This document shows positions 1,130-56,070 of a stretch of 64,000 nucleotides of DNA, one piece after another. The notes beneath the pieces are model-generated. The model had not been told where the DNA came from, ran no database searches, and saw only the letters and a list, made by a program, of their open reading frames with translations. The translations under genes and the position numbers were made by a program. Position 1 is the stretch's first letter. The number at the start of each line of letters is the position of its first letter. The DNA comes from Octopus sinensis (Eukaryota): positions 1 through 64,000 of the forward strand of contig NW_021836299.1 of NCBI RefSeq assembly GCF_006345805.1, in the 5' to 3' direction.

Positions 1130-2761
1130 AATCGCCCCTTCGTTTGTAAACATTTACAAACGAAGGGGCGATCGTTCTGAGTGTGGAAATTACCGGGGTA
1201 TTTCCTTATTAGCAACTGCTGGGAAGATTCATGCACGCATCCTGAACAACCGCCTCAAACCGCTGTCAGAGATGATCCTTCCTGAGACGCAGACCGGCTT
1301 TAGGCCATCATGAAGCACAACCGACATGATCTTCACGCTGCGACAGCTACAAGAAAAATTTCGTGAGCAACACCAACCGCTCTATTTGGCCTTTATCGAC
1401 CTATCCAAAGCCTTTGATCGTGTCTCGCGAGAGCTCCTCTGGGATATTCTCGCCCAGTATGGATGCCCAGATAAGTTCATCCGGATCCTCAAACTCCTCC
1501 ACGACAATATGCACGCCAGAGTCCAGACCGACGGAGGCAGTTCTGAGCCCTTTAAAGTCACCTCCGGAGTGAAGCAAGGCTGCGTGATAGCGCCAACTCT
1601 CTTTACCATCTTTATCGCGACAGTGTTGCACATCATACGAGATGACCTTCCACCTGGCATCGAGATCTCGTACAGAATGGACGGCAAGCTTTTCAACCTC
1701 GCTCGCCTCAAAAGTACGTCAAAGACAATGGCGCGAAGCTTGCTAGAGTTCCAATATGCCGACGACAACAGTGTAGCAGCTTACAGAGAGGATCACCTCC
1801 AACAGATCCTAAATGCTTTTCATCATGCATATACTAAACTTGGACTGATCATCAACATCAAGAAGACTCATTTACTCTACCAACCTCCTCCCAATGCTCT
1901 TGTTGACAACCCGCCATCGATTCAACTCGAAGGAATTCCACTGGAAAAAGTGAACCATTTCTGCTACCTTGGGAGCCATCTATCAGCAAAGGTAGACCTC
2001 AGCGATGAAATCCAACACCGTCCGAAGTGTGCAGGAATAGCTTTCGGCAAGCTTCGAACAAGAGTTTTTGCTGATCGGGACATCCGAACCGAAACCAAAC
2101 TCATGGTGTACGGGGCATTCATTATTCCAACCCTCCTTTACGCATCCGAAACCTGGACCCCGTATAGTCACCACCTGAAAACGCTCGAGAAATTTCACCA
2201 ACGCTGTCTTCGGAAGATCCTTAACATCAGCTGGGAAGACAGAAGAACTAACGTCAGCGTGCTACAAGAAGCAAAAATGACCAGCATCGAAGCCTATGTC
2301 ATCAAAGGCCAACTAAGATGGAGCGGCAACGTGGTTAGAATGACTGATGAACGACTTCCCAAACAGATATTCTATTCCCAACTCAAAGACGGCAAGCATA
2401 CAAAAGGAGGCCAGAATAAACGCTACAAGGACTCCCTGAAAACGAACCTCAAAAGGTGTGACATCGACTTCACTAACTGGGAGGAAACGGCAAAAAACAG
2501 ACCCCTCTGGAAAACCACCATCCATGAGGGAACGGCGACTTTCGAGTCGAAAAGGTCTGCAGAGCTGGAGGAGAAAAGACGACGACGGAAGGAGCGCCAA
2601 CAACAACAACGTGCGACTCTCCCTTCCGGCACTAGATGTCCGCACTGCGACTGATCTTTTCAAGCAAGAATTGGACTTATCGGTCACCTACGGACTCACC
2701 AGTAAATTTGCGCGAAGACCATCATCCTCGACCTTGAGGGATTGCCAAGACAAAAAAAAAA
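1130..2761 (+). mobile_element. 5'-truncated RTE-clade (RTE/BovB-like) non-LTR retrotransposon
   Basis: RT motifs YKRRGDRSECGNYRGISLL, AFIDLSKAFD, GVKQGCVIAP, QYADD. C-terminal CPHC..H...H finger. 3' end gaagaccatcatcctcgaccttgagggattgccaagac plus A tail. 11-bp TSD ggtacgttgta (1119-1129) / ggtacattgta (2762-2772). Confidence 0.95.
1152..2705 (+). pseudogene. RTE reverse transcriptase ORF (5'-truncated), in-frame TGA at 1311-1313 and 2652-2654
   Basis: ORF 1326-2654 continues in frame upstream (IYKRRGDRSE...GFRPS*STTDM) and downstream (CPHCD*SFQARIGLIGHLRTHQ*). Confidence 0.9.
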
Positions 2762-7990: not shown

Positions 7991-9497
7991 TTAAACTTGG
8001 TCTAAATTTTTTATGAAATATAGTTCTTTATTTTGGCGTTGTGTGAAGGTTGCGTTGTCACTGAATTTATAGAGCGGGTTAGTTGTAAATTTCGGATTTA
8101 CATTTCCAGCACATCTATCTATGTGTCCGCTGACCGGTATTTTGCGGTAATCAGGGTTTCTAATTTGTGATTTATGCACCGCCATCCTGTTACGTAAGCT
8201 ATTTTTTGTATGGCCTATATACTGCCTATTGCAGCCTGCGCATGTTATGACGTAAATTAAGTTTTCTGATGCGCAGGTGAAGTTTGTTCTAATGGTGAAC
8301 TGGTGGCCTTGTTCCAGTATAAATTCTGATCCTTCTTTCAAGATGACACAGATTCCGCAGTTGGGCCTTCCACATTTTCTAACTGCTGGTTTTGTGGTTG
8401 ATGTTGAGTGCAGTGTAGCTTGGGTTAAAATCCTTTTCAAGGATTTTGGTTGCCGTTTACTTTTAATGATGGTGTGTGTTTCGAGGATCCGGTTCATCTT
8501 TGGGTCTCCCTTTAGTAGGGCTGTGCTTTGTAGTATGGTGTTGAAGGCCTCATTGTTGAGTGGGTTGTGTGTAGAGATGTAGGGAAGGGTTTTTAATTGT
8601 TCTTTCTTTTTTGGTTTTGTTTGTCTCAGGTCTTCTATACTTAATTTAAGTACCCGTTGGATTGCACTGTCTATTAGGGGCTGTGGATAGTTTCTATTTG
8701 TGAGTGTGGTTCTAAGTTCCTGGAGACGTGTGTGTCGGGTGTGTTTGTGTCTGATATTATGGTGCAAATCCTTCTAGCTAAACAAAAAGGGACATTCATT
8801 CTAGTGTGTCGTGGGTGGCATGAATCAAGGGTAGGTACTGTTAGAGTCTGTCGGTTTATAGTAGATATCTGTCTCTATTTGTTGCCGGTCTTAATGAGGA
8901 TGTCTAAAAATGGTAATTCTTTTTCGTTGTGGTCCATCGTGAATTGTATATTGTCATTTATTCCATTTAATAGAATTTTAAATTCCTCAAGTTTCTCTAT
9001 GCCTTTGTCCCAGATGATGAAACAGTCATCGAGGTATCTTTTCCAGTTGTTATGGATATAGGTGGCGAAGGTGTTTCCATATTTCTCGAGTGTCATCCGG
9101 TATAGTATTTTCTCGAGGTATCCCCATCACTAGGTTGGCAAAAGATGGTGCAGTACGCGTGCCCATCGCTGTTCCCGATCTTTGCCTGTAGAAATCATTG
9201 TCAAAAATAAAATAATTGTTCTCTAAAATGAATCTAAGTCCTTCTATTATAAGGTCTTTGTTTATGCGAGTTGGGAGTTCAAAGGGGTAGTTATTCAGCC
9301 AGAAGGTGATTGCTTCTATTCCTAGGTTGTGAGGGATGTTAGAATAAAGATTAACTACGTCGAATGATACTAGAAGGGTTTTCTCATTGACTGTTTTAGG
9401 GAGGTGGTTGAGCATATCTATATCGTCTCTTACGTAGCTTTTGATGTGTTTTAGGAAAGGTTTAAGAAGTGTGTCTAAGAAATTGCTGAGGCGGTGA
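7991..9497 (-). pseudogene. Penelope RT/GIY-YIG ORF broken by frameshifts (track ORFs 9050-9517, 8875-9096, 7991-8767)
   Basis: Consecutive domain motifs lie in three frames. Confidence 0.88.
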
Positions 9498-11049: not shown

Positions 11050-11095
<46 letters not shown>

Positions 11096-11333
11096 TCATA
11101 ATAATAATAATGATAACAATAATAATAATAATAATAATAATAACAATCCTTTCTATCATAGGCACAAGACCTCAAATTTGGGGGAGAGGTACTGGTCGAT
11201 TTCTTCGACCCCAGTGTTCAACTGGTACTTATTTCATCGACCCCGAAAGGCTGAAAGGCAAAGCCGACCTCGGACGAAATGCCGCTAATCGTTTTGCCCA
11301 GCGTGCTAACGATTCTGCCAGCTCGTCGCCTTC
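10900..11333 (-). mobile_element. Two SINE family C copies (10900-11050, 11145-11333) separated and flanked by (TAA)n
   Basis: Same core as other family C copies; tail ...cctatgatagaaaggattgttatt(ATT)n on the element strand. Confidence 0.8.
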
Positions 11334-11346
11334 AATAATAATAATG

Positions 11347-11400
<54 letters not shown>

Positions 11401-11401
<1 letters not shown>

Positions 11402-13232
11402 CGCGCAGTATGGGTATAAAATGTTTGATAAAAATATAAATCATCTCATTTACATGGATGATTTAAAGCTTTTTGCAAAAAATGACCAACAACTCAAGGG
11501 CTTACTAGCGATAGTCAAACAATTCAGTGACGACATCAGAATGCAATTCGGCCTCGATAAATGTGCAAAAGCTACCTTTATCAAAGGAAAAATGACAGAA
11601 ACATCTAACGTTAACCTTGACCAGCAGAATGTCATAAAAGAACTAGACCCAGCGGAGAGCTACAAGTACCTAGGGGTAATTGAAGGGAACGGAATAAGGC
11701 ATTCAGAGATGAAGGAAAGGATCAGGAGAGAATGCTATCGAGAGTGAGAGCAATACTCAAGACAGAGCTGAATGCAAGAAACAGGATCGAAGCGATCAAT
11801 GCATTAGCCATACCAGTCGTGACTTACAGTTTCAATATTGTTAACTGGTCAATTACTGAAATATGACAGCTCGACAGAAAAATAAGGAAACTGTTGACAA
11901 TGCATAGAATGCACCACCCTAAGGCAGATACAGAACGACTCTATCTGCAAAGAAAAGAGGGAGGACGTGGTCTTTTGCAACTGGCAATAACAATGAAGAT
12001 TGCTACAATTCGCCTAGACACCTACCTGAAAAACTCTGAGGACTGGATGTTAAAACTTGTCTCAAAACATGAAAACAAGAAAGCATCATACTCAGTCACA
12101 AAACAGGCAAAGGAATATCTAAGTGAATTCCGAATACAACCAATTTCGGAATTAGAGATAGGCATACAAGAAACAAGCACAGAAAAAGCTAGGCGCATTA
12201 AAACCCGTGCCAAAACTGCGGCCTTAGATATTCTGAATAATAAATGGCAAGAAAAACCTCTCTATGGCAAATACCCAAAGAGAGCGAATAATGCAGATAT
12301 TGACAAAGCCCTGATCCATCAATGGCTAATGGCCTCTGGCTTAAAATCTGAAACAGAGGGGTTTATCATAGCAGCTCACGATCAATGCCTACCAACAAGA
12401 AACTACCAGGCCAACATATTAAAGAACGGCAGTAGCCCAACATGTCGTGTATGCCGACAACAAAATGAAACCATTGATCATGTTGTCTCCAAATGCAGTC
12501 TTCTAGCGCCTACAGAGTACCTCAACAGGCATGATAGAGCTGCACAATATATTCACTGGGTAATTTGCAAAAACCTGGACTTGCCCTATGAAAAAAACTG
12601 GTGGGAACACAATCCACCTCCAGTGCTTGAAAATGACCACATCTCACTCCTCTGGAACTTCACCATTCAAACTGACAGGAAGATAGATGCAAATAGGCCA
12701 GACATCATATTGAAAGACTTCAGACAAAGAACATGCCTCCTCATTGATATGACTGTCCCAATCGATATAAACGTATCTGTCAAGACCTACCAAAAACTGA
12801 GCAAATATAAAGATCTTGAAATAGAAATCAGCAAAATGTGAAAGCTGAAGACTAAAACAATACCTGTTGTCATAGGTGCCCTGGGAATGATAGCGAAAGG
12901 GACTAATTGCTACCTAACTCAGATACCAGGAAACCCCCAAATGGCAGAAATTCAAAAGATAGTACTCATGGGAACTGTTCATATCCTACGCAAAATACTC
13001 TCTATGTAATCCCAAGGTTTAAAACAAACTTCTTTTTATTTATTTATTTATTTTTTAAATTTTATTTTATTTATTTTTTTTATGTATTAGGCATTCACTA
13101 GTACAACACCAAAAAAAAAGAAAAACAAGAAAACCAAATATATGGCACAGAACTTCCAACCTGTTGTCTCTTGAGGTCTCTGGGTGAGACTTGGAGCCAA
13201 TTTGTACAGACATAAAGCAAAAGTCAAACATA

Positions 13233-13233
<1 letters not shown>
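11401..13233 (+). mobile_element. 5'-truncated R4/Dong-type non-LTR retrotransposon (RT 3' half, CCHC, restriction-like endonuclease) within (TAA)n
   Basis: HLIYMDDLKLF, YKYLG, GGRGL, CRVCRQQNETIDHVVSKC, RHD, RPDIILKD...LLIDMTVP...KYKDL. Stops and frameshifts near 11745, 11864 and 12839. (TAA)n on both sides. Confidence 0.92.
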
Positions 13234-13289
<56 letters not shown>

Positions 13290-51059: not shown

Positions 51060-51107
51060 TTTGGGCATTATATAACAACAACAACAACAATGATAATAAT
51101 AATAATA

Positions 51108-51139
<32 letters not shown>

Positions 51140-51244
51140 TTAATAATAATAATGATGATGATGACGATGACGATAACGATGACGATGATGATGATGATGA
51201 TGATGATGATAATAATAATAATAATGATAATAATAATAATAATG

Positions 51245-51304
<60 letters not shown>
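51060..51304. repeat. (CAA)n/(TAA)n/(TGA)n microsatellite; left flank of the R4/Dong element
   Basis: Directly visible. Confidence 0.95.
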
Positions 51305-51305
<1 letters not shown>

Positions 51306-51802
51306 GGACACCGGGGACGTTTAAGAGGACACCGGGGACGTTTAAGAGGACACCGGGGACGTTTAAGAGGACACCGGGGACGTTTAAGAGACACCGGGGA
51401 CGTTTAAGAGGACACCGGGGACGTTTAAGAGGACACCGGGGACGTTTAAGGACACCGGGGACGTTTAAGAGGACACCGGGGACGTTTAAGAGGACACCGG
51501 GGACGTTTAAGAGGACACCGGGGACGTTTAAGAGGACACCGGGGACGTTAAGAGGACACCGGGGACGTTTAGAGGACACCGGGGACGTTTAAGAGGACAC
51601 CGGGGACGTTTAAGAGACACCGGGGACGTTTAAGAGGACACCGGGGACGTTTAAGAGGACACCGGGGACGTTTAAGAGGACACCGGGGACGTTTAAGATG
51701 TAGGACACCGGGGACGTTTAAGATGTAAGGACACCGGGGACGTTTAAGATGTAGGACACCGGGGACGTTTAAGATGTAGGACACCGGGGACGTTTAAGAT
51801 GT
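51305..51802 (+). repeat. 23 tandem copies of AGGACACCGGGGACGTTTAAG (21 bp); units 19-22 are followed by ATGT or ATGTA before the next unit, and unit 23 runs into the element body
   Basis: Hand count; no spacers; the last unit continues as ...TTTAAGATGTAAGAAGGAAAATAC into the R4/Dong 5' region. Confidence 0.95.
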
Positions 51803-52000
51803 AAGAAGGAAAATACAGAGCTCCGAAATCTATCCACAAACATCCAAAACAAGGACACCCTATGGAGCCAAAAATTTACTAACAAAGAATTGGACTATAT
51901 CCGAGTAAGTAATACTAATTGAAATTTATTACTATTTTCGAAACGAAATGATGTATTTTGACTCGATATTATCTCCACCTCTAACACAACACATGTAAAC

Positions 52001-55000
52001 ATGCATGGAACAACACGATCATCCCCGACCTCAAACACCATGTACAAAGGAACTACGAAGAAATTAAATGCCACCGATACTATTCAACCCAAGAATAACA
52101 ATCGAGCGGTACGTACATTAAACCTACAACAAAAAATGTACGAAAAACTACACGTGCGAAATAATGTGACAACAGAAATAAACGGACCGGTACCCTACGA
52201 AAATGACGACCGTCAAAATAATGGGCCGGACGTTGTACCTCATGTCCCGCAATTAAAACCCAAAAGACGTAAATGGACACGTGAGGAATACATTTCTATC
52301 TTACACGCATACTTCACAGCAATGCTCTACCCACAAAATGAAAATACAACAACACATACATATAAAATATGGAAGGAAAATAATAGAGATATAGACTTGG
52401 ATACAGCAATGAACCTAATAAATTAGCTAACGTACGAAGATACATTCTCAAAGCCAAAAAAATATCAGAAATAGAAATAGAACATTTAAAAGAAAAAATA
52501 CACCAGGAAAATGTAGATAGAAGCCACACAACAATGCCCAATAATATAAACACTGAAACTGTAAAACACGAAGACAAACGCAACATTCCCAACAAACACG
52601 ATATAAACAACGAAGGGGAGCCTAATGATTATGATAATATAAAAAATAAAATAATCAAAGAACTAAAAACCACAGAGCTCAAAATGGACCACCGACCATA
52701 CCTCCCAAGAATAAAAATAAACGCAATAACAACACCAATTATAAACAACATAAACCTAGCCGTCACTGAACTAGCCACTGAAACAAAAAAAAGTGATATC
52801 ACTGAACTAAATGACTTGATATACGTAGCAGCCACTGCAGCCACAAAAGAAGCTGGATACTGACCCAAACCCGCCCAAACAGGAGTACCACCACCCAAAC
52901 AAACCCTGTGGATAAATAACATCCAAAACAAAATCAAAAAAATTAGAAAAGACCTGTCGATTCTTAATGAAATCAGCAAACAAGCAACGCTACTGAGCAA
53001 CAAAAAGAGAACAAAAATGCTCCGCAAATATAACATCACAGAAAAAGATTTGCCGGAGATAAAAGAAAAGCTGAAGCAAGATATCCTTGCCAAAGCTCAA
53101 AGGATCCGCCGGTACGAGAAACGCCAACGCTTCTTTGAACAGAACAAAAAGTTCAACTCCGACCCCAAAAAGTTCTACCAAGAACTGGGAAAAAATAAAA
53201 TAGAAGTCACTGCAGCACCAACGGCAGAAGAATTGGAAGAATTCTGGAAAGAAATATGGTCGGCGAACGAACAGCCAAAAAAAAGGAGTATGAAATAACA
53301 AACTCGGCATCTGAACAACTTTGGACCCCCATAACAACTGAAGAGGTCACCCAGGCACTGCAAAAACTAAGCAACTGGAAGGCACCTGGGCATGACAAGA
53401 TCCCCAACTTCTGGTTGAAATATCTAACAGGAATGCACAAAAAGCTGGCTGAAAACTTTAACAGCATACTAGCAGAGCCAGAGACAATGCCTGAATGGCT
53501 AACGAAGGGGAAAACCATCTTAATTCCCAAATCAAATGAAACAACAAAACCAACAAACTACAGACCAATAACCTGCCTCCCTACTATGTTCAAGGCATTT
53601 ACTGCAGTGATATCGCAAAGGCTGAACAAGCACCTGGACGAAAACAAACTGTTCCCAGAAGAGCAGAAAGGATGCCGCAAGGGCTCATATGGCTGTAAAG
53701 ATCAACTAATGATTAATAAAGCCGTAACTGAAGACAGCCACAGAAAGAAGAAAGGCCTCAGTATGGCCTGGATTGACTACAAAAAGGCGTTTGATAGCAT
53801 CCCCCACACATGGATCCTCGAAACACTAGCCATTAACAAAGTAGCACCAACAATCATAAAATTCATAGAGCACTCTATGAATAAATGGCAAACAGTCCTA
53901 CACCTCCAAACAAAAGAGGGACTCATGAAAACCAAAGACATCCCCATTAGAAGAGGAATATTCCAGGGAGACACGCTCTCTCCACTCCTTTTCTGCTTGG
54001 CACTGTCACTTCTATCTGATATGCTAAATAGAACTGGATGCGGATATAAATGTTACGGCAAAACGATCAGCTACCTTTTATATATGGATGACCTAAAACT
54101 ATACGCTGCAAATGACAAACAGCTGGAAACACTATTAAAGACAGTTCATTGATTTACCAAAGAAATAGATATGAAATTTGGATTAGAAAAATGCGCCAAA
54201 GTAACCATGAAAAGAGGAAAACTAGTTAAGAGTAACAACATCACACTAGATAAAACCAATGAAATAAAAGAATTAGACCAAAGCCAAACTTACAAATACT
54301 TAGGAATCCATGAACTAGATAAGACACAACACACACAAATGAAAGAGAAAATAAAAAAAGAATATTATAGACGAGTTAGATCAATACTAAAAACAGAGCT
54401 CAATGCTAAAAACAAGATAATAGGTATCAACACTTTAGCTGTCCCAGTTATAAGTTACAGCTACAATATCCTTAACTGGACACGAAATGAACTGTCCAAA
54501 ATAGATAGGAAAACAAGAAAAATACTGACAGGATCTAGGATGCATCACCCAAAATCTGACATAGAAAGACTATATATACAACGTATAGAAGGTGGTAGAG
54601 GCCTTATACAGCTGGAAAACTACTATAAAATAACCACCATAGGACTGCAAAAATACCTACTTCAGAAGGAAGGAAAACTGATCCAGATAGCAGCAAAACA
54701 CGAGCAAAACAAAAAACTGTTCTCAGTATTTAAGGAAGCTGACAAATACAACAAGAAATCATACCACCTAATAAACACAAAGAAGAAGAAGAAGATGATG
54801 AAAAACAACAAAAGCTATAAAACAAATGAAATCCAAACTAAAAATAGAACAGCAACGAGCCATGATAAAACGATGGCAAGAAAAGCCCCTTCATGGTAAA
54901 TACTGGACTAAACTAAACGCAAAAGAAATAGACAAAGAAAAATCCCAGCAATGGTTGAGAAGCTCAGGACTCAAAGCAGAAACAGAGGGATTTTTAATTG

Positions 55001-55641
55001 CAGCACAAGACCAAAGCCTCCCCACCAGAAATTACCAAAAACATGTAATGAAAAGAAATATTACAAGTAACTGCAGAATATGTGGAGATGGACAAGAAAC
55101 AATAAATCATATTATCTCTAGCTGCCCAGTCCTGGCTAAGAAGGAATATATTCACAGACATGACAGAGTTGGAACCTACATACATTGGAAGCTATGCCAA
55201 CATTATGGAATAACAACAGAAAAAAGATGGTATAGGCACACACCAGAAAAGGTCACAGAAAACGAGAAAGCAACCATACTCTGGGATATGCCGATACACA
55301 CAGATAGAGAAATTAAGGCCAACAGACCAGATATAGTTGTCAGAGATCATGAAGAAAAAAAATGCTTTCTAATTGATGTATCAATACCGGCAGATGACAA
55401 CGTGTCTCTAAAAGAAATGGAGAAACTCTCAAAATACAAAGACCTGGAAATAGAGGTAACTAGAATGTGGAACCTGAAAACAGAAACAATTCCTATCATA
55501 GTAGGTGCATTAGGCATGATAAAAAAATATTCAGACAAATACATAACAAAAACACCAGGACTTACAAACACATATAACATACAGAAAATTGCACTACTAG
55601 GCACTGCACACATCCTACGCAGAACACTTTCCATACAATAA
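52001..55641 (+). pseudogene. R4/Dong ORF interrupted by about 3 frameshifts (near 52420, 53270, 54800) and 2 in-frame TGA (52861, 54150)
   Basis: Track ORFs 52001-52426, 52534-52863, 53017-53298, 53256-54152, 54171-54899 and 54826-55641 tile one protein. Some breaks lie in A runs and could be sequencing errors. Confidence 0.85.
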
Positions 55642-55735
55642 CCATCGGAGCATCACAACAAATCACAGCACATACCCAAGGCACACAGAGCTGCGCTCGG
55701 TAGTGAAGTGAAAGCACGCTATAAAAATAAAACTA

Positions 55736-55768
<33 letters not shown>

Positions 55769-55795
55769 TGCTGCCAGTATACAATCCATGCGATT

Positions 55796-56070
55796 GAGAA
55801 TAACTTCCTTCTTCGCTTCCAGGAATCCCTATTGAGGGTTATGAGCACTGCTCTGCCTCTTGACAAACGATAGAAAAATAATATGAATGGGTACTTTTTT
55901 TCCCCATATGTATTTTTTTCCCTGTCCTGCATTCAAGCTAGGTCAGCGACCGAGAATAATTTCCTTCCTTCTTGGCATCTAAGAATCCCTGTTAAGGGTT
56001 ATGGGCTCTGCTTTTCTTCTTGATAAACGTTAGAAAAATGATAATGTAAATCGTTTTTTTCTCCCCCTTG
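55796..56070. repeat. Diverged 156-bp-period tandem duplication
   Basis: gagaataacttccttctt...gaatccctattgagggttatg...ttgacaaacgatagaaaaat at 55796 versus gagaataatttccttcc...gaatccctgttaagggttatg...ttgataaacgttagaaaaat at 55952. Confidence 0.8.

What the first reader, a model, noticed from the sequence alone, without database searches (positions are those of the whole stretch)
51305..51830. Retrotransposon 5' end reiterated 23 times: telomerase-like repeat addition by an R4/Dong RT?
Seen: between the (TAA)n target and the body of a near full-length R4/Dong LINE are 23 tandem units. Most start at AGGACACC (a few have 1-2 nt deletions) and stop at +21 nt (first 18 units) or +25/+26 nt (units 19-22, next to the body). 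Unit 23 runs straight into the element (AGGACACCGGGGACGTTTAAG-ATGT-A-AGAAGG...). The array is therefore nested copies of the element's own first 21-26 nt, with a fixed 5' start and variable 3' breakpoint, and the longer units are nearest the body. Known: in target-primed reverse transcription the cDNA ends at the RNA 5' end, and R2-type RTs can jump templates with little or no homology. Inference: after reaching the 5' end the RT repeatedly re-primed at +21/+25/+26, where the template continues ATG/AAG/AGA, giving 1-2 nt microhomology to the terminal AGG, and recopied the end. That would be processive repeat addition resembling telomerase. Alternatives are post-insertion minisatellite slippage via the recurring TAAG, intrinsic 5' UTR monomers, or assembly inflation.
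Basis: partly seen in the sequence, partly recalled or inferred. Interest (0 to 1): 0.78.

Follow-up and report, generated by a model that had tools for sequence, protein, structure and literature searches.

The report
Minisatellite from a LINE's 5' end
A Dong-like retrotransposon sitting in a (TAA)n microsatellite carries 22 extra tandem copies of its own first 21-26 bases. The array is real, but its layout fits ordinary amplification of an existing repeat better than telomerase-like re-copying by the element's reverse transcriptase, and one locus cannot settle which.

Summary
Window 51305-51777 holds 22 tandem units, and a 23rd runs into the element body. Eighteen are of the 21-nt class: 13 exact and five with 1-2-nt deletions. 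Four are of 25/26/25/25 nt and lie next to the body. All variation is indel; there are no substitutions.

The body (51778-55738) is a decayed, near full-length LINE of the restriction-like-endonuclease (R2/R4/Dong) type. It lies between (AAT)n tracts, like relatives fetched from other genomes.

The telomerase-like reading could not be tested directly. No second copy of this family exists in any collection I could reach. Within the locus, the four long units all sit at the body end (P = 1.4e-4 if each unit were an independent jump). This argues against repeated re-priming on a one-unit RNA. It fits one or two founder duplications followed by homology-driven amplification.

Whether a DNA polymerase or the RT did that amplification, and whether before, at or after insertion, is undecided. 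Six related families with intact 5' ends show no such array. 5' VNTRs on LINEs are already known (L1Md monomers, FoTeR).

Interest is modest. All genomic copies, raw long reads and 5' RACE would decide.

The parts
51089..51304 (+). Upstream target microsatellite: an impure (AAT)n tract with an internal GAT/GAC run. Its last TAA plus the first G of the array forms a TAAG.
   Evidence: TRF period 3, 72.7 copies; sequence.
51305..51676 (+). Distal block of 18 units of the 21-nt class, AGGACACCGGGGACGTTTAAG. Thirteen are exact and five carry 1-2-nt deletions, all within TTTAAGAGG.
51677..51777 (+). Proximal block of 4 longer units (25, 26, 25 and 25 nt): the 21-nt unit plus ATGT or ATGTA, which matches body positions +22 to +26.
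51778..52000 (+). The element's own 5' end and 5' UTR (about 223 nt). It starts with the 23rd copy of the unit. It shows no significant secondary structure and no detectable ribozyme.
   Evidence: fold z-score +0.46.
51851..51859 (+). A solitary AAGGACACC at +74 in the 5' UTR. It contains the only GGACACC in the 64-kb window outside the array. Unexplained.
52001..55641 (+). Decayed single ORF of the LINE. It has three frameshifts (about 52384-52411; 53259-53280 at an A8 run; 54749-54802 in (AAG)5) and two in-frame TGA stops (52861 and 54150).
53199..54149 (+). Reverse transcriptase segment.
   Evidence: Pfam RVT_1, E = 5e-27. The closest solved structures are R2 proteins, E = 3e-26. The best database relatives are 55-58% identical.
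54802..55641 (+). C-terminal zinc knuckle plus restriction-like endonuclease region. No AP-endonuclease domain was found.
   Evidence: Pfam zf-RVT. Aligns to the C-terminal CCHC/endonuclease part of R2 proteins. An RPD...D...K motif is visible in the translation.
55739..55768 (+). (AAT)10 at the 3' end of the insertion: the element's tail and/or the rest of the target microsatellite. Unique DNA follows.

Best explanation
The array is a minisatellite (VNTR) born from the first 21-26 bp of a Dong-like LINE.

Shown:
- The units are copies of the element's own terminus.
- They fall into two contiguous blocks.
- They differ only by small indels.

Inferred:
- One or two founder duplications arose at the junction between the (TAA)n target and the element. 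TAAG occurs at that junction, at +18-21 and at +25-28. Slippage between these copies gives the 26-nt and 19-nt periods directly. Loss of one A then gives 25 nt, and a 4-nt deletion (ATGT) gives 21 nt.
- Once two identical units existed, whole-unit misalignment multiplied them. The mechanism would be slipped-strand mispairing or unequal exchange in this extremely repeat-prone genome. The 21-nt variant grew to 18 copies.

Most likely this happened in DNA at this locus after insertion. Part of it may already have been present in the source copy. The array need not have a function. If it was carried in the RNA, it could buffer the promoter or 5' end against 5' truncation, as mouse L1 monomers are proposed to do.
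For: - Block order. All 4 long units lie next to the body and all 18 short ones are distal. This has P = 1.4e-4 under exchangeable independent events. Like units clustering is the signature of local amplification.
- Unit types. One type dominates (13 exact copies plus 5 one-step derivatives). The better microhomology sites were each used only once.
- Homogeneity versus decay. The array has 0 substitutions in 495 bp and all 46 CpGs intact. The body has 2 nonsense mutations and 3 frameshifts. A same-rate test gives p about 0.076, which is weak but points the expected way.
- Genome context. TRF gives 137 rows for the 64-kb window, including other 10-30-bp minisatellites.
- Relatives. Six related (TAA)n-inserting families with intact 5' ends have no 5' reiteration, so it is not a clade habit of the RT. 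These are L002/3, L004, L005-8, L009, L013/14 and L019.
- Precedent. TE-derived tandem repeats and 5' VNTRs on LINEs are well documented (PMC3389668, PMC7004042, PMC12857005, PMC6454616).
Against: - The dominant 21-nt and 25-nt periods have only 1-nt microhomology, although 4-nt TAAG repeats are available. The DNA route therefore needs extra deletion steps.
- All units share a 5' boundary that coincides with the end of the element. Template switching at an RNA end would give this automatically.
- All five indel variants lie in the 9 nt spanning the unit junction (TTTAAGAGG) and none in the GGGG run. This hints at imprecise joining. The test is post hoc and weak: p about 0.014 under a uniform model and about 0.08 when weighted by homopolymer runs.
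- The age of the copy is unknown because there is no family consensus. Some frameshifts may be assembly errors.
- Nothing here shows whether the array arose before or after insertion.
Confidence: 0.45

Rival explanations
1. Inherited 5' UTR monomer array. The source element's RNA already contained the tandem units, and this copy simply inherited them. This would be a family trait, possibly promoter or protein-binding units, comparable to L1Md monomers or FoTeR/MoTeR/SLACS 5' repeats. Unit number drifts between retrotransposition cycles.
For: - The array begins with a complete unit immediately after (TAA)n, as expected if the RNA 5' end is a unit start.
- 5' tandem repeats with variable copy number are known in LINEs, including endonuclease-type relatives (PMC6454616; PMC12857005).
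- This element shows no detectable 5' ribozyme or structured leader, so it may need an internal promoter.
- The unit contains GGACGTT, which resembles the arthropod downstream promoter element consensus. That consensus is from my own knowledge and was not tested.
Against: - No other copy of the family could be found to show the trait.
- No related family shows it.
- The array has no substitutions although the body is decayed (weak).
Confidence: 0.27
2. RT-made at insertion. After reaching the RNA 5' end, the Dong-type RT switched template and recopied the terminus many times. The acceptor could be +21/+25/+26 of a one-unit RNA. In the variant, the cDNA end realigns by whole-unit homology on an RNA that already had two or more units, which is truly telomerase-like.
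For: - All units share the element's terminal nucleotide as their 5' boundary.
- Indel heterogeneity is concentrated at the junctions.
- R2-type RTs jump templates serially in vitro and in cells, for example onto U6 RNA (PMC11371274; the title and abstract listed for 10.1101/2021.04.30.442027).
- A bacterial RT (DRT2) makes concatemeric repeat cDNA from one template (PMC12039810).
- The multi-unit-RNA variant predicts a homogeneous distal block, as observed.
Against: - The block order contradicts independent jumps on a one-unit RNA (P = 1.4e-4).
- Usage runs opposite to microhomology strength.
- The documented jumps of R2-type RTs land on the 3' ends of acceptor molecules, not on internal sites (my own knowledge of the R2 template-jumping literature, not checked here; one search is consistent with it).
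- Twenty-two consecutive jumps in one event would need very high processivity.
- No related family shows 5' reiteration.
Confidence: 0.18
3. Assembly artefact. The true locus has only one or two units, and the assembler inflated the array.
For: - Tandem arrays are often mis-sized in long-read assemblies.
- The only variants are 1-2-nt deletions, four of the five within short homopolymer runs, which is a typical long-read error type.
Against: - Assemblers mis-size arrays rather than invent them (general knowledge).
- The ordered structure of two unit classes, with a unique 26-nt unit, is not what collapse or inflation produces.
- The 495 bp is easily spanned by single long reads.
Confidence: 0.05

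Closest known systems
Dong (Bombyx mori) and the R4 clade of restriction-like-endonuclease LINEs
   Same: Single ORF with an RT and a C-terminal zinc knuckle plus PD-(D/E)XK-type endonuclease. Insertion into (TAA)n, with (TAA)n on both sides. About 4 kb long.
   Different: The RT is only 55-58% identical to the nearest database relatives. Dong and R4 are reported to have a 5' HDV-like ribozyme that cleaves at the exact 5' junction (PMC3774820). None was detected here. Neither the paper read here nor the six relatives examined shows a terminal 21-nt array.
Mouse L1Md promoter monomers; 5' VNTRs of FoTeR/MoTeR; 185-bp 5' repeats of SLACS (the last from memory)
   Same: Tandem units at the very 5' end of a LINE, upstream of the ORF. 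Copy number varies between copies. For L1Md, the authors propose that monomer duplication maintains the promoter during truncation-prone retrotransposition (PMC6454616; PMC12857005).
   Different: L1Md monomers (about 200 bp) and SLACS repeats (185 bp) are much longer (sizes from my own knowledge), and all of these arrays are family-wide. Here the unit is 21-26 bp, is nested in the unique 5' end, and is seen at one locus only. Promoter activity was not tested.
Telomerase
   Same: A tandem array of short units, each a copy of the same short stretch of an RNA associated with an RT of the same broad lineage.
   Different: Telomerase has an internal template with a repeated alignment region and a template boundary. 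A one-unit RNA here offers only 1-2 nt for realignment. The units are of two lengths arranged in blocks. No evidence ties the RT to the array.
Serial template jumping by R2 RT; DRT2 concatemeric cDNA synthesis
   Same: These are demonstrated ways for a non-telomerase RT to string template copies head to tail (PMC11371274; PMC12039810).
   Different: R2 jumps go to the 3' end of an acceptor and copy whole molecules. DRT2 uses a structured ncRNA with defined jump sites. Reiteration of only nt 1-21 would need either 21-nt acceptor RNAs or internal realignment.
TE-derived minisatellites and satellites formed by replication slippage or unequal exchange
   Same: A homogeneous tandem array derived from part of a transposable element. 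Variant units cluster in blocks, and the genome is repeat-prone (PMC3389668, PMC7004042).
   Different: The unit boundary coincides with the element's terminus. The dominant periods do not use the best available direct repeats.
HeT-A 5' 'Tags' in Drosophila (from memory: Traverse et al. 2010)
   Same: Short reiterated terminal sequences accumulate at the 5' end of a LINE over successive transpositions.
   Different: HeT-A tags are copies of the 3' end of the upstream element and arise from promoter placement. Here the units copy the element's own 5' end.

Membership tests
R4/Dong-clade restriction-like-endonuclease LINE | Reverse transcriptase of LINE type, closest to R2-group RTs | tested here: met
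   Pfam RVT_1, E = 5e-27. The best PDB matches are R2 proteins, E = 3e-26, ahead of L1 ORF2p.
R4/Dong-clade restriction-like-endonuclease LINE | C-terminal CCHC zinc knuckle plus PD-(D/E)XK endonuclease, and no AP endonuclease | tested here: met
   Pfam zf-RVT hit. Alignment to the C-terminal region of R2 proteins. RPD...D...K is visible in the translation. No Exo_endo_phos hit on any ORF piece.
R4/Dong-clade restriction-like-endonuclease LINE | Dong-type target: insertion in (TAA)n | tested here: met
   (AAT)n lies on both sides. The same holds for relatives L002, L004, L005-8, L009 and L013/14.
R4/Dong-clade restriction-like-endonuclease LINE | Phylogenetic placement with Dong/R4 rather than R2, CRE or NeSL | not tested
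   No reference Dong or R4 protein was available in the tools. Placement rests on target and architecture only.
R4/Dong-clade restriction-like-endonuclease LINE | HDV-like self-cleaving ribozyme at the 5' end (reported for Dong and R4, PMC3774820) | tested here: inconclusive
   No Rfam match at E <= 1. My own descriptor and a search for a P1 partner found nothing, and the leader is not structured. The descriptor and Rfam also found nothing in relatives, so sensitivity is unproven.
Telomerase-like processive repeat addition | The template offers a realignment region, so that the 3' end of the product can re-pair downstream | tested here: not met
   On a one-unit RNA only 1 nt (at +22 and +26) or 2 nt (at +20/21 and +27/28) match the terminal AG. 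The feature would be met only if the RNA already carried two or more units, which is unknown.
Telomerase-like processive repeat addition | Units added by repeated equivalent cycles on one template | tested here: not met
   Two unit classes lie in two contiguous blocks. P = 1.4e-4 under exchangeable cycles.
Telomerase-like processive repeat addition | The RT itself synthesises the repeats | not testable with these tools
   This needs biochemistry, or independent insertions of the same family.
LINE 5' UTR monomer or VNTR array (L1Md, FoTeR type) | Tandem units at the 5' end, upstream of the ORF | tested here: met
LINE 5' UTR monomer or VNTR array (L1Md, FoTeR type) | Present in many copies of the family and in the RNA, with variable number | not testable with these tools
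   No other copy of the family was found in any collection.
Slippage-born minisatellite | Direct repeats flank the founder unit | tested here: inconclusive
   TAAG at the target/element junction, at +18-21 and at +25-28 explains the 19-nt and 26-nt periods. It does not directly explain the dominant 21-nt and 25-nt periods.
Slippage-born minisatellite | Like variants cluster; the array is more homogeneous than the surrounding DNA of the same insertion | tested here: met
   Block structure. There are 0 substitutions in 495 bp, against a body with 5 disabling lesions. The rate comparison is only p about 0.076.
Slippage-born minisatellite | Length polymorphism between alleles or individuals | not testable with these tools
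   No reads or alternative assemblies were available.

The most novel reading that the evidence does not exclude
The Dong-type RT extends its own element's 5' end. Once an RNA carries two terminal units, the finished cDNA end unpairs, realigns on the next unit by full 21-nt homology and recopies the terminal unit. This is a telomerase-like align-and-copy cycle on a retrotransposon RNA. It would add units at each retrotransposition and buffer the element against 5' attrition.

A more speculative version is that the RT jumps end-to-end onto 21-nt and 25-26-nt 5'-terminal RNA fragments, which are in the size range of small RNAs.
Probability: 0.15. Interest if true: 0.8.

Novelty: new member of a known kind. 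Interest (0 to 1): 0.3.

Why it matters
If the RT made the array, this would be a natural case of a LINE reverse transcriptase adding short repeats processively. That would be a living intermediate between retrotransposon RTs and telomerase, and it would show how LINEs can rebuild truncation-prone 5' ends.

If, as seems more likely, it is a DNA-level minisatellite or an ordinary 5' UTR repeat, it is one more example of transposable elements seeding tandem repeats in a very repeat-rich genome. Its main use would then be as an annotation note, and perhaps as a polymorphic marker.

Tried and rejected
Searches for other copies of the family all failed:
- Exact 19-mer scans gave 0 hits in viral contigs and 0 in prokaryotic genome contigs.
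- The metagenome scan gave one hit, a chance match inside a GC-rich bacterial contig.
- An RT protein search found nothing above 58% identity.
- The family-specific N-terminal piece found nothing.
- An exact-protein look-up of the window's RT ORF was not on record.
- Protein-guided scans of viral contigs gave nothing.

The source genome is therefore evidently not in the collections.

Ribozyme search:
- Rfam at E <= 1 found nothing in the window or in the relatives.
- A home-made HDV-like descriptor found nothing credible. It also found nothing in the relatives, so it is not validated.

Arguments I dropped or downgraded:
- CpG decay. I considered that both TGA stops came from CGA, which would imply heavy CpG decay in the body against 46 intact CpGs in the array. 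The relatives have S, T or K, not R, at the alignable stop, so I dropped this.
- Junction clustering of indels. The p-values are 0.014 to 0.08 and post hoc, so I kept this only as a hint.
- Higher-order repeats. TRF periods of 144 and 165 were examined. The variant units (4, 7, 12, 13, 15) show no periodic pattern.
- tRNA-like leader. The tRNA-like look of the L013/L014 5' leaders was not confirmed by ARAGORN.

Full report
**What is there**

The 20-mer GGACACCGGGGACGTTTAAG occurs 23 times in the 64-kb window. All copies are head to tail on the + strand between 51306 and 51798, against 0 expected by chance. TRF reports one array at 51305-51799, with period 21, 23.0 copies, 95% matches and 4% indels.

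Exact parsing gives the following.
- Units 1-18 (51305-51676) are of the 21-nt class. Thirteen are exact.
- Units 4 and 15 lack one G at the unit junction. Unit 7 lacks AG. Unit 12 has TTT->TT and unit 13 has AA->A.
- Units 19-22 (51677-51777) are 25, 26, 25 and 25 nt. The extra ATGT or ATGTA is identical to what follows the 23rd copy in the unique body (…TTTAAGATGTAAGAAGG…).
- There is not a single base substitution in the 495 bp.

**The host element**

Downstream, 51778-55738 is a 3.96-kb LINE.
- It has a roughly 223-nt leader and one decayed ORF. The ORF carries three frameshifts and two TGA stops.
- It contains a Pfam RVT_1 domain and a zf-RVT zinc knuckle, and no AP endonuclease.
- The RT is closest to R2 proteins among solved structures.
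- The C-terminus aligns to the CCHC/endonuclease part of R2 proteins.
- The insertion is bounded by an impure (AAT)n tract upstream (51089-51304) and by (AAT)10 followed by unique DNA downstream.

Relatives with 45-58% RT identity, fetched from other assemblies, are likewise roughly 4-5-kb elements lying between (TAA)n tracts. 'Dong-like, restriction-like-endonuclease LINE in (TAA)n' is therefore supported. A formal phylogenetic placement was not possible.

Dong and R4 are reported to carry a 5' HDV-like ribozyme that cleaves at the exact 5' junction (PMC3774820). I found none here: Rfam, my own descriptor, a P1-partner search and folding (z = +0.46) were all negative. The same methods found none in the relatives either, so this negative is weak.

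**Can the decisive comparison be made?**

- The 19-mer is absent from viral and prokaryotic genome contigs.
- Its only metagenome hit is a chance match in a bacterial contig.
- The best RT relatives are at most 58% identical.
- The family-specific N-terminal piece has no hit.
- The window's RT ORF is not on record.
- Protein-guided scans of viral contigs gave nothing.

The genome of origin looks decapod-like because of its extreme simple-repeat load (137 TRF rows). It is evidently not in the collections. The decapod origin is an inference.

**What the single locus says**

*Block order.* The two unit classes are not interspersed. All four long units abut the body and all 18 short ones are distal. 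If each unit were an independent jump of the RT back onto the same one-unit RNA, the order should be exchangeable. The chance of this arrangement is then 1/C(22,4) = 1.4e-4.

*Microhomology.* The terminal AG matches 2 nt at +20/21 and at +27/28. These sites give periods of 19 and 26, and each was used once. It matches only 1 nt at +22 and +26. These sites give periods of 21 and 25, and were used about 17 and 3 times. Usage is therefore opposite to microhomology strength.

Both points indicate that most units are copies of pre-existing units. They point to one or two founder events followed by whole-unit, homology-driven amplification.

*Homogeneity.* The array has no substitution and all 46 CpGs intact. 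The body has two nonsense mutations and three frameshifts. A same-rate comparison gives only p about 0.076. One frameshift lies in an A8 run and one in (AAG)5, so assembly error is possible. This is therefore only a hint that the array is younger than the insertion.

*Relatives.* Six related families with intact 5' ends show no 5' reiteration. These are L002/3, L004, L005-8 at two sites, L009, L013/14 and L019. It is not a general habit of these RTs.

**What still speaks for an RNA-end event**

- All units share one 5' boundary, and it is the end of the element.
- The dominant 21-nt and 25-nt periods do not use the 4-nt TAAG direct repeats that are available. These lie at the (TAA)n+G junction, at +18-21 and at +25-28.
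- All five indel variants lie in the 9 nt spanning the junction, and none in the GGGG run. This is post hoc and weak (p about 0.014 to 0.08).

A DNA-only route exists but needs several steps. TAAG/TAAG slippage gives a 26-nt founder, loss of one A gives 25 nt, a 4-nt deletion (ATGT) gives 21 nt, and expansion follows.

R2-type RTs do jump templates serially, and in cells they jump onto small RNAs (PMC11371274). A bacterial RT builds concatemeric cDNA (PMC12039810). An RT origin of the founder duplications is therefore plausible. So is RT realignment on an RNA that already had two units. Neither is shown.

**Ranking**

| Explanation | Confidence |
|---|---|
| Founder duplication(s) at the target/element junction, then homology-driven amplification in DNA, mostly at this locus | 0.45 |
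| The same array inherited from the source RNA as a family 5' UTR repeat, like L1Md monomers or FoTeR VNTRs (PMC6454616, PMC12857005) | 0.27 |
| Assembly inflation | 0.05 |

The simple telomerase-like model, with independent re-priming on a one-unit RNA, is the least compatible with the anatomy.

**Novelty and interest**

Tandem repeats at LINE 5' ends and TE-derived minisatellites are known kinds. This one is a neat case because the units are nested copies of the very terminus. I file it as a new member of a known kind, with modest interest (0.3).

The most novel reading not excluded is an align-and-copy cycle of a LINE RT on its own terminal repeats. It has perhaps 15% probability and would be of high interest. 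The next steps listed in the report would decide it.

Noticed in passing
window 11400-13287: A second, 5'-truncated Dong-like LINE from a different family, with about 68% nucleotide identity over a short stretch. It starts inside the RT (…YMDDLKLF…) directly after (AAT)n at 11334-11399 and ends at (AAT)n at 13234-13287. It gives a zf-RVT hit.
   Followed up: partly
window 11148-11333: A roughly 185-bp non-repetitive insert sits between (TAA)n at 11051-11147 and (AAT)n at 11334-11399. It looks like a short non-autonomous element that also targets TAA repeats. ARAGORN finds no tRNA.
   Followed up: no
window 51851-51859: AAGGACACC recurs once in the 5' UTR, 73 nt after the last unit start. GGACACC occurs nowhere else in the 64-kb window on either strand. 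It could be a vestige of an older duplication or a binding motif.
   Followed up: partly
window 55769-56050: Directly downstream of the element, two similar segments of about 110 nt (…GAGAATAA[CT]TTCCTTC…AATCCCT[AG]TT[GA]AGGGTTATG[AG]GC…GATAGAAAAAT…) lie about 165 bp apart. This is another local duplication or a repeat family.
   Followed up: no
window 1326-2654 (+) and 7991-8767 (-): Other retroelements are present: an unrelated RT ORF (RVT_1) and a GIY-YIG-containing ORF typical of Penelope-like elements. The whole window is extremely rich in simple repeats (137 TRF rows).
   Followed up: partly
L013 3536-3620 and L014 552-640: Two copies of a Dong-like family sit on contigs filed under a 'Dehalococcoidia MAG', presumably eukaryotic contamination. 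Their 5' leader has tRNA-like box motifs (GTGGCTTAGTGGTTAGC … GGTTCAAACCCC). The two copies start 14 nt apart. ARAGORN does not call a tRNA.
   Followed up: partly
L019 4969-5187 and 8496-8933: A relative with 45% RT identity is flanked on both sides by a 14-nt satellite, (ATAATACAATATTA)n, instead of pure (TAA)n. This may be a shifted target.
   Followed up: no
L005 598-630 and L006 85-116: Two copies with different upstream flanks share the same imperfect leader, TAATAATAATAATAATTATAATAATAATAA, in front of the element start ACGCAGGGG. Either part of the TAA tract travels with the element RNA, or the contigs are chimeric.
   Followed up: no
L012, L015-L018, L021: LINE RT sequences of this group occur on contigs deposited as cyanobacterial, Mucilaginibacter and Paenarthrobacter genomes or MAGs. 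These are most likely host or eukaryote contamination in the assemblies.
   Followed up: no
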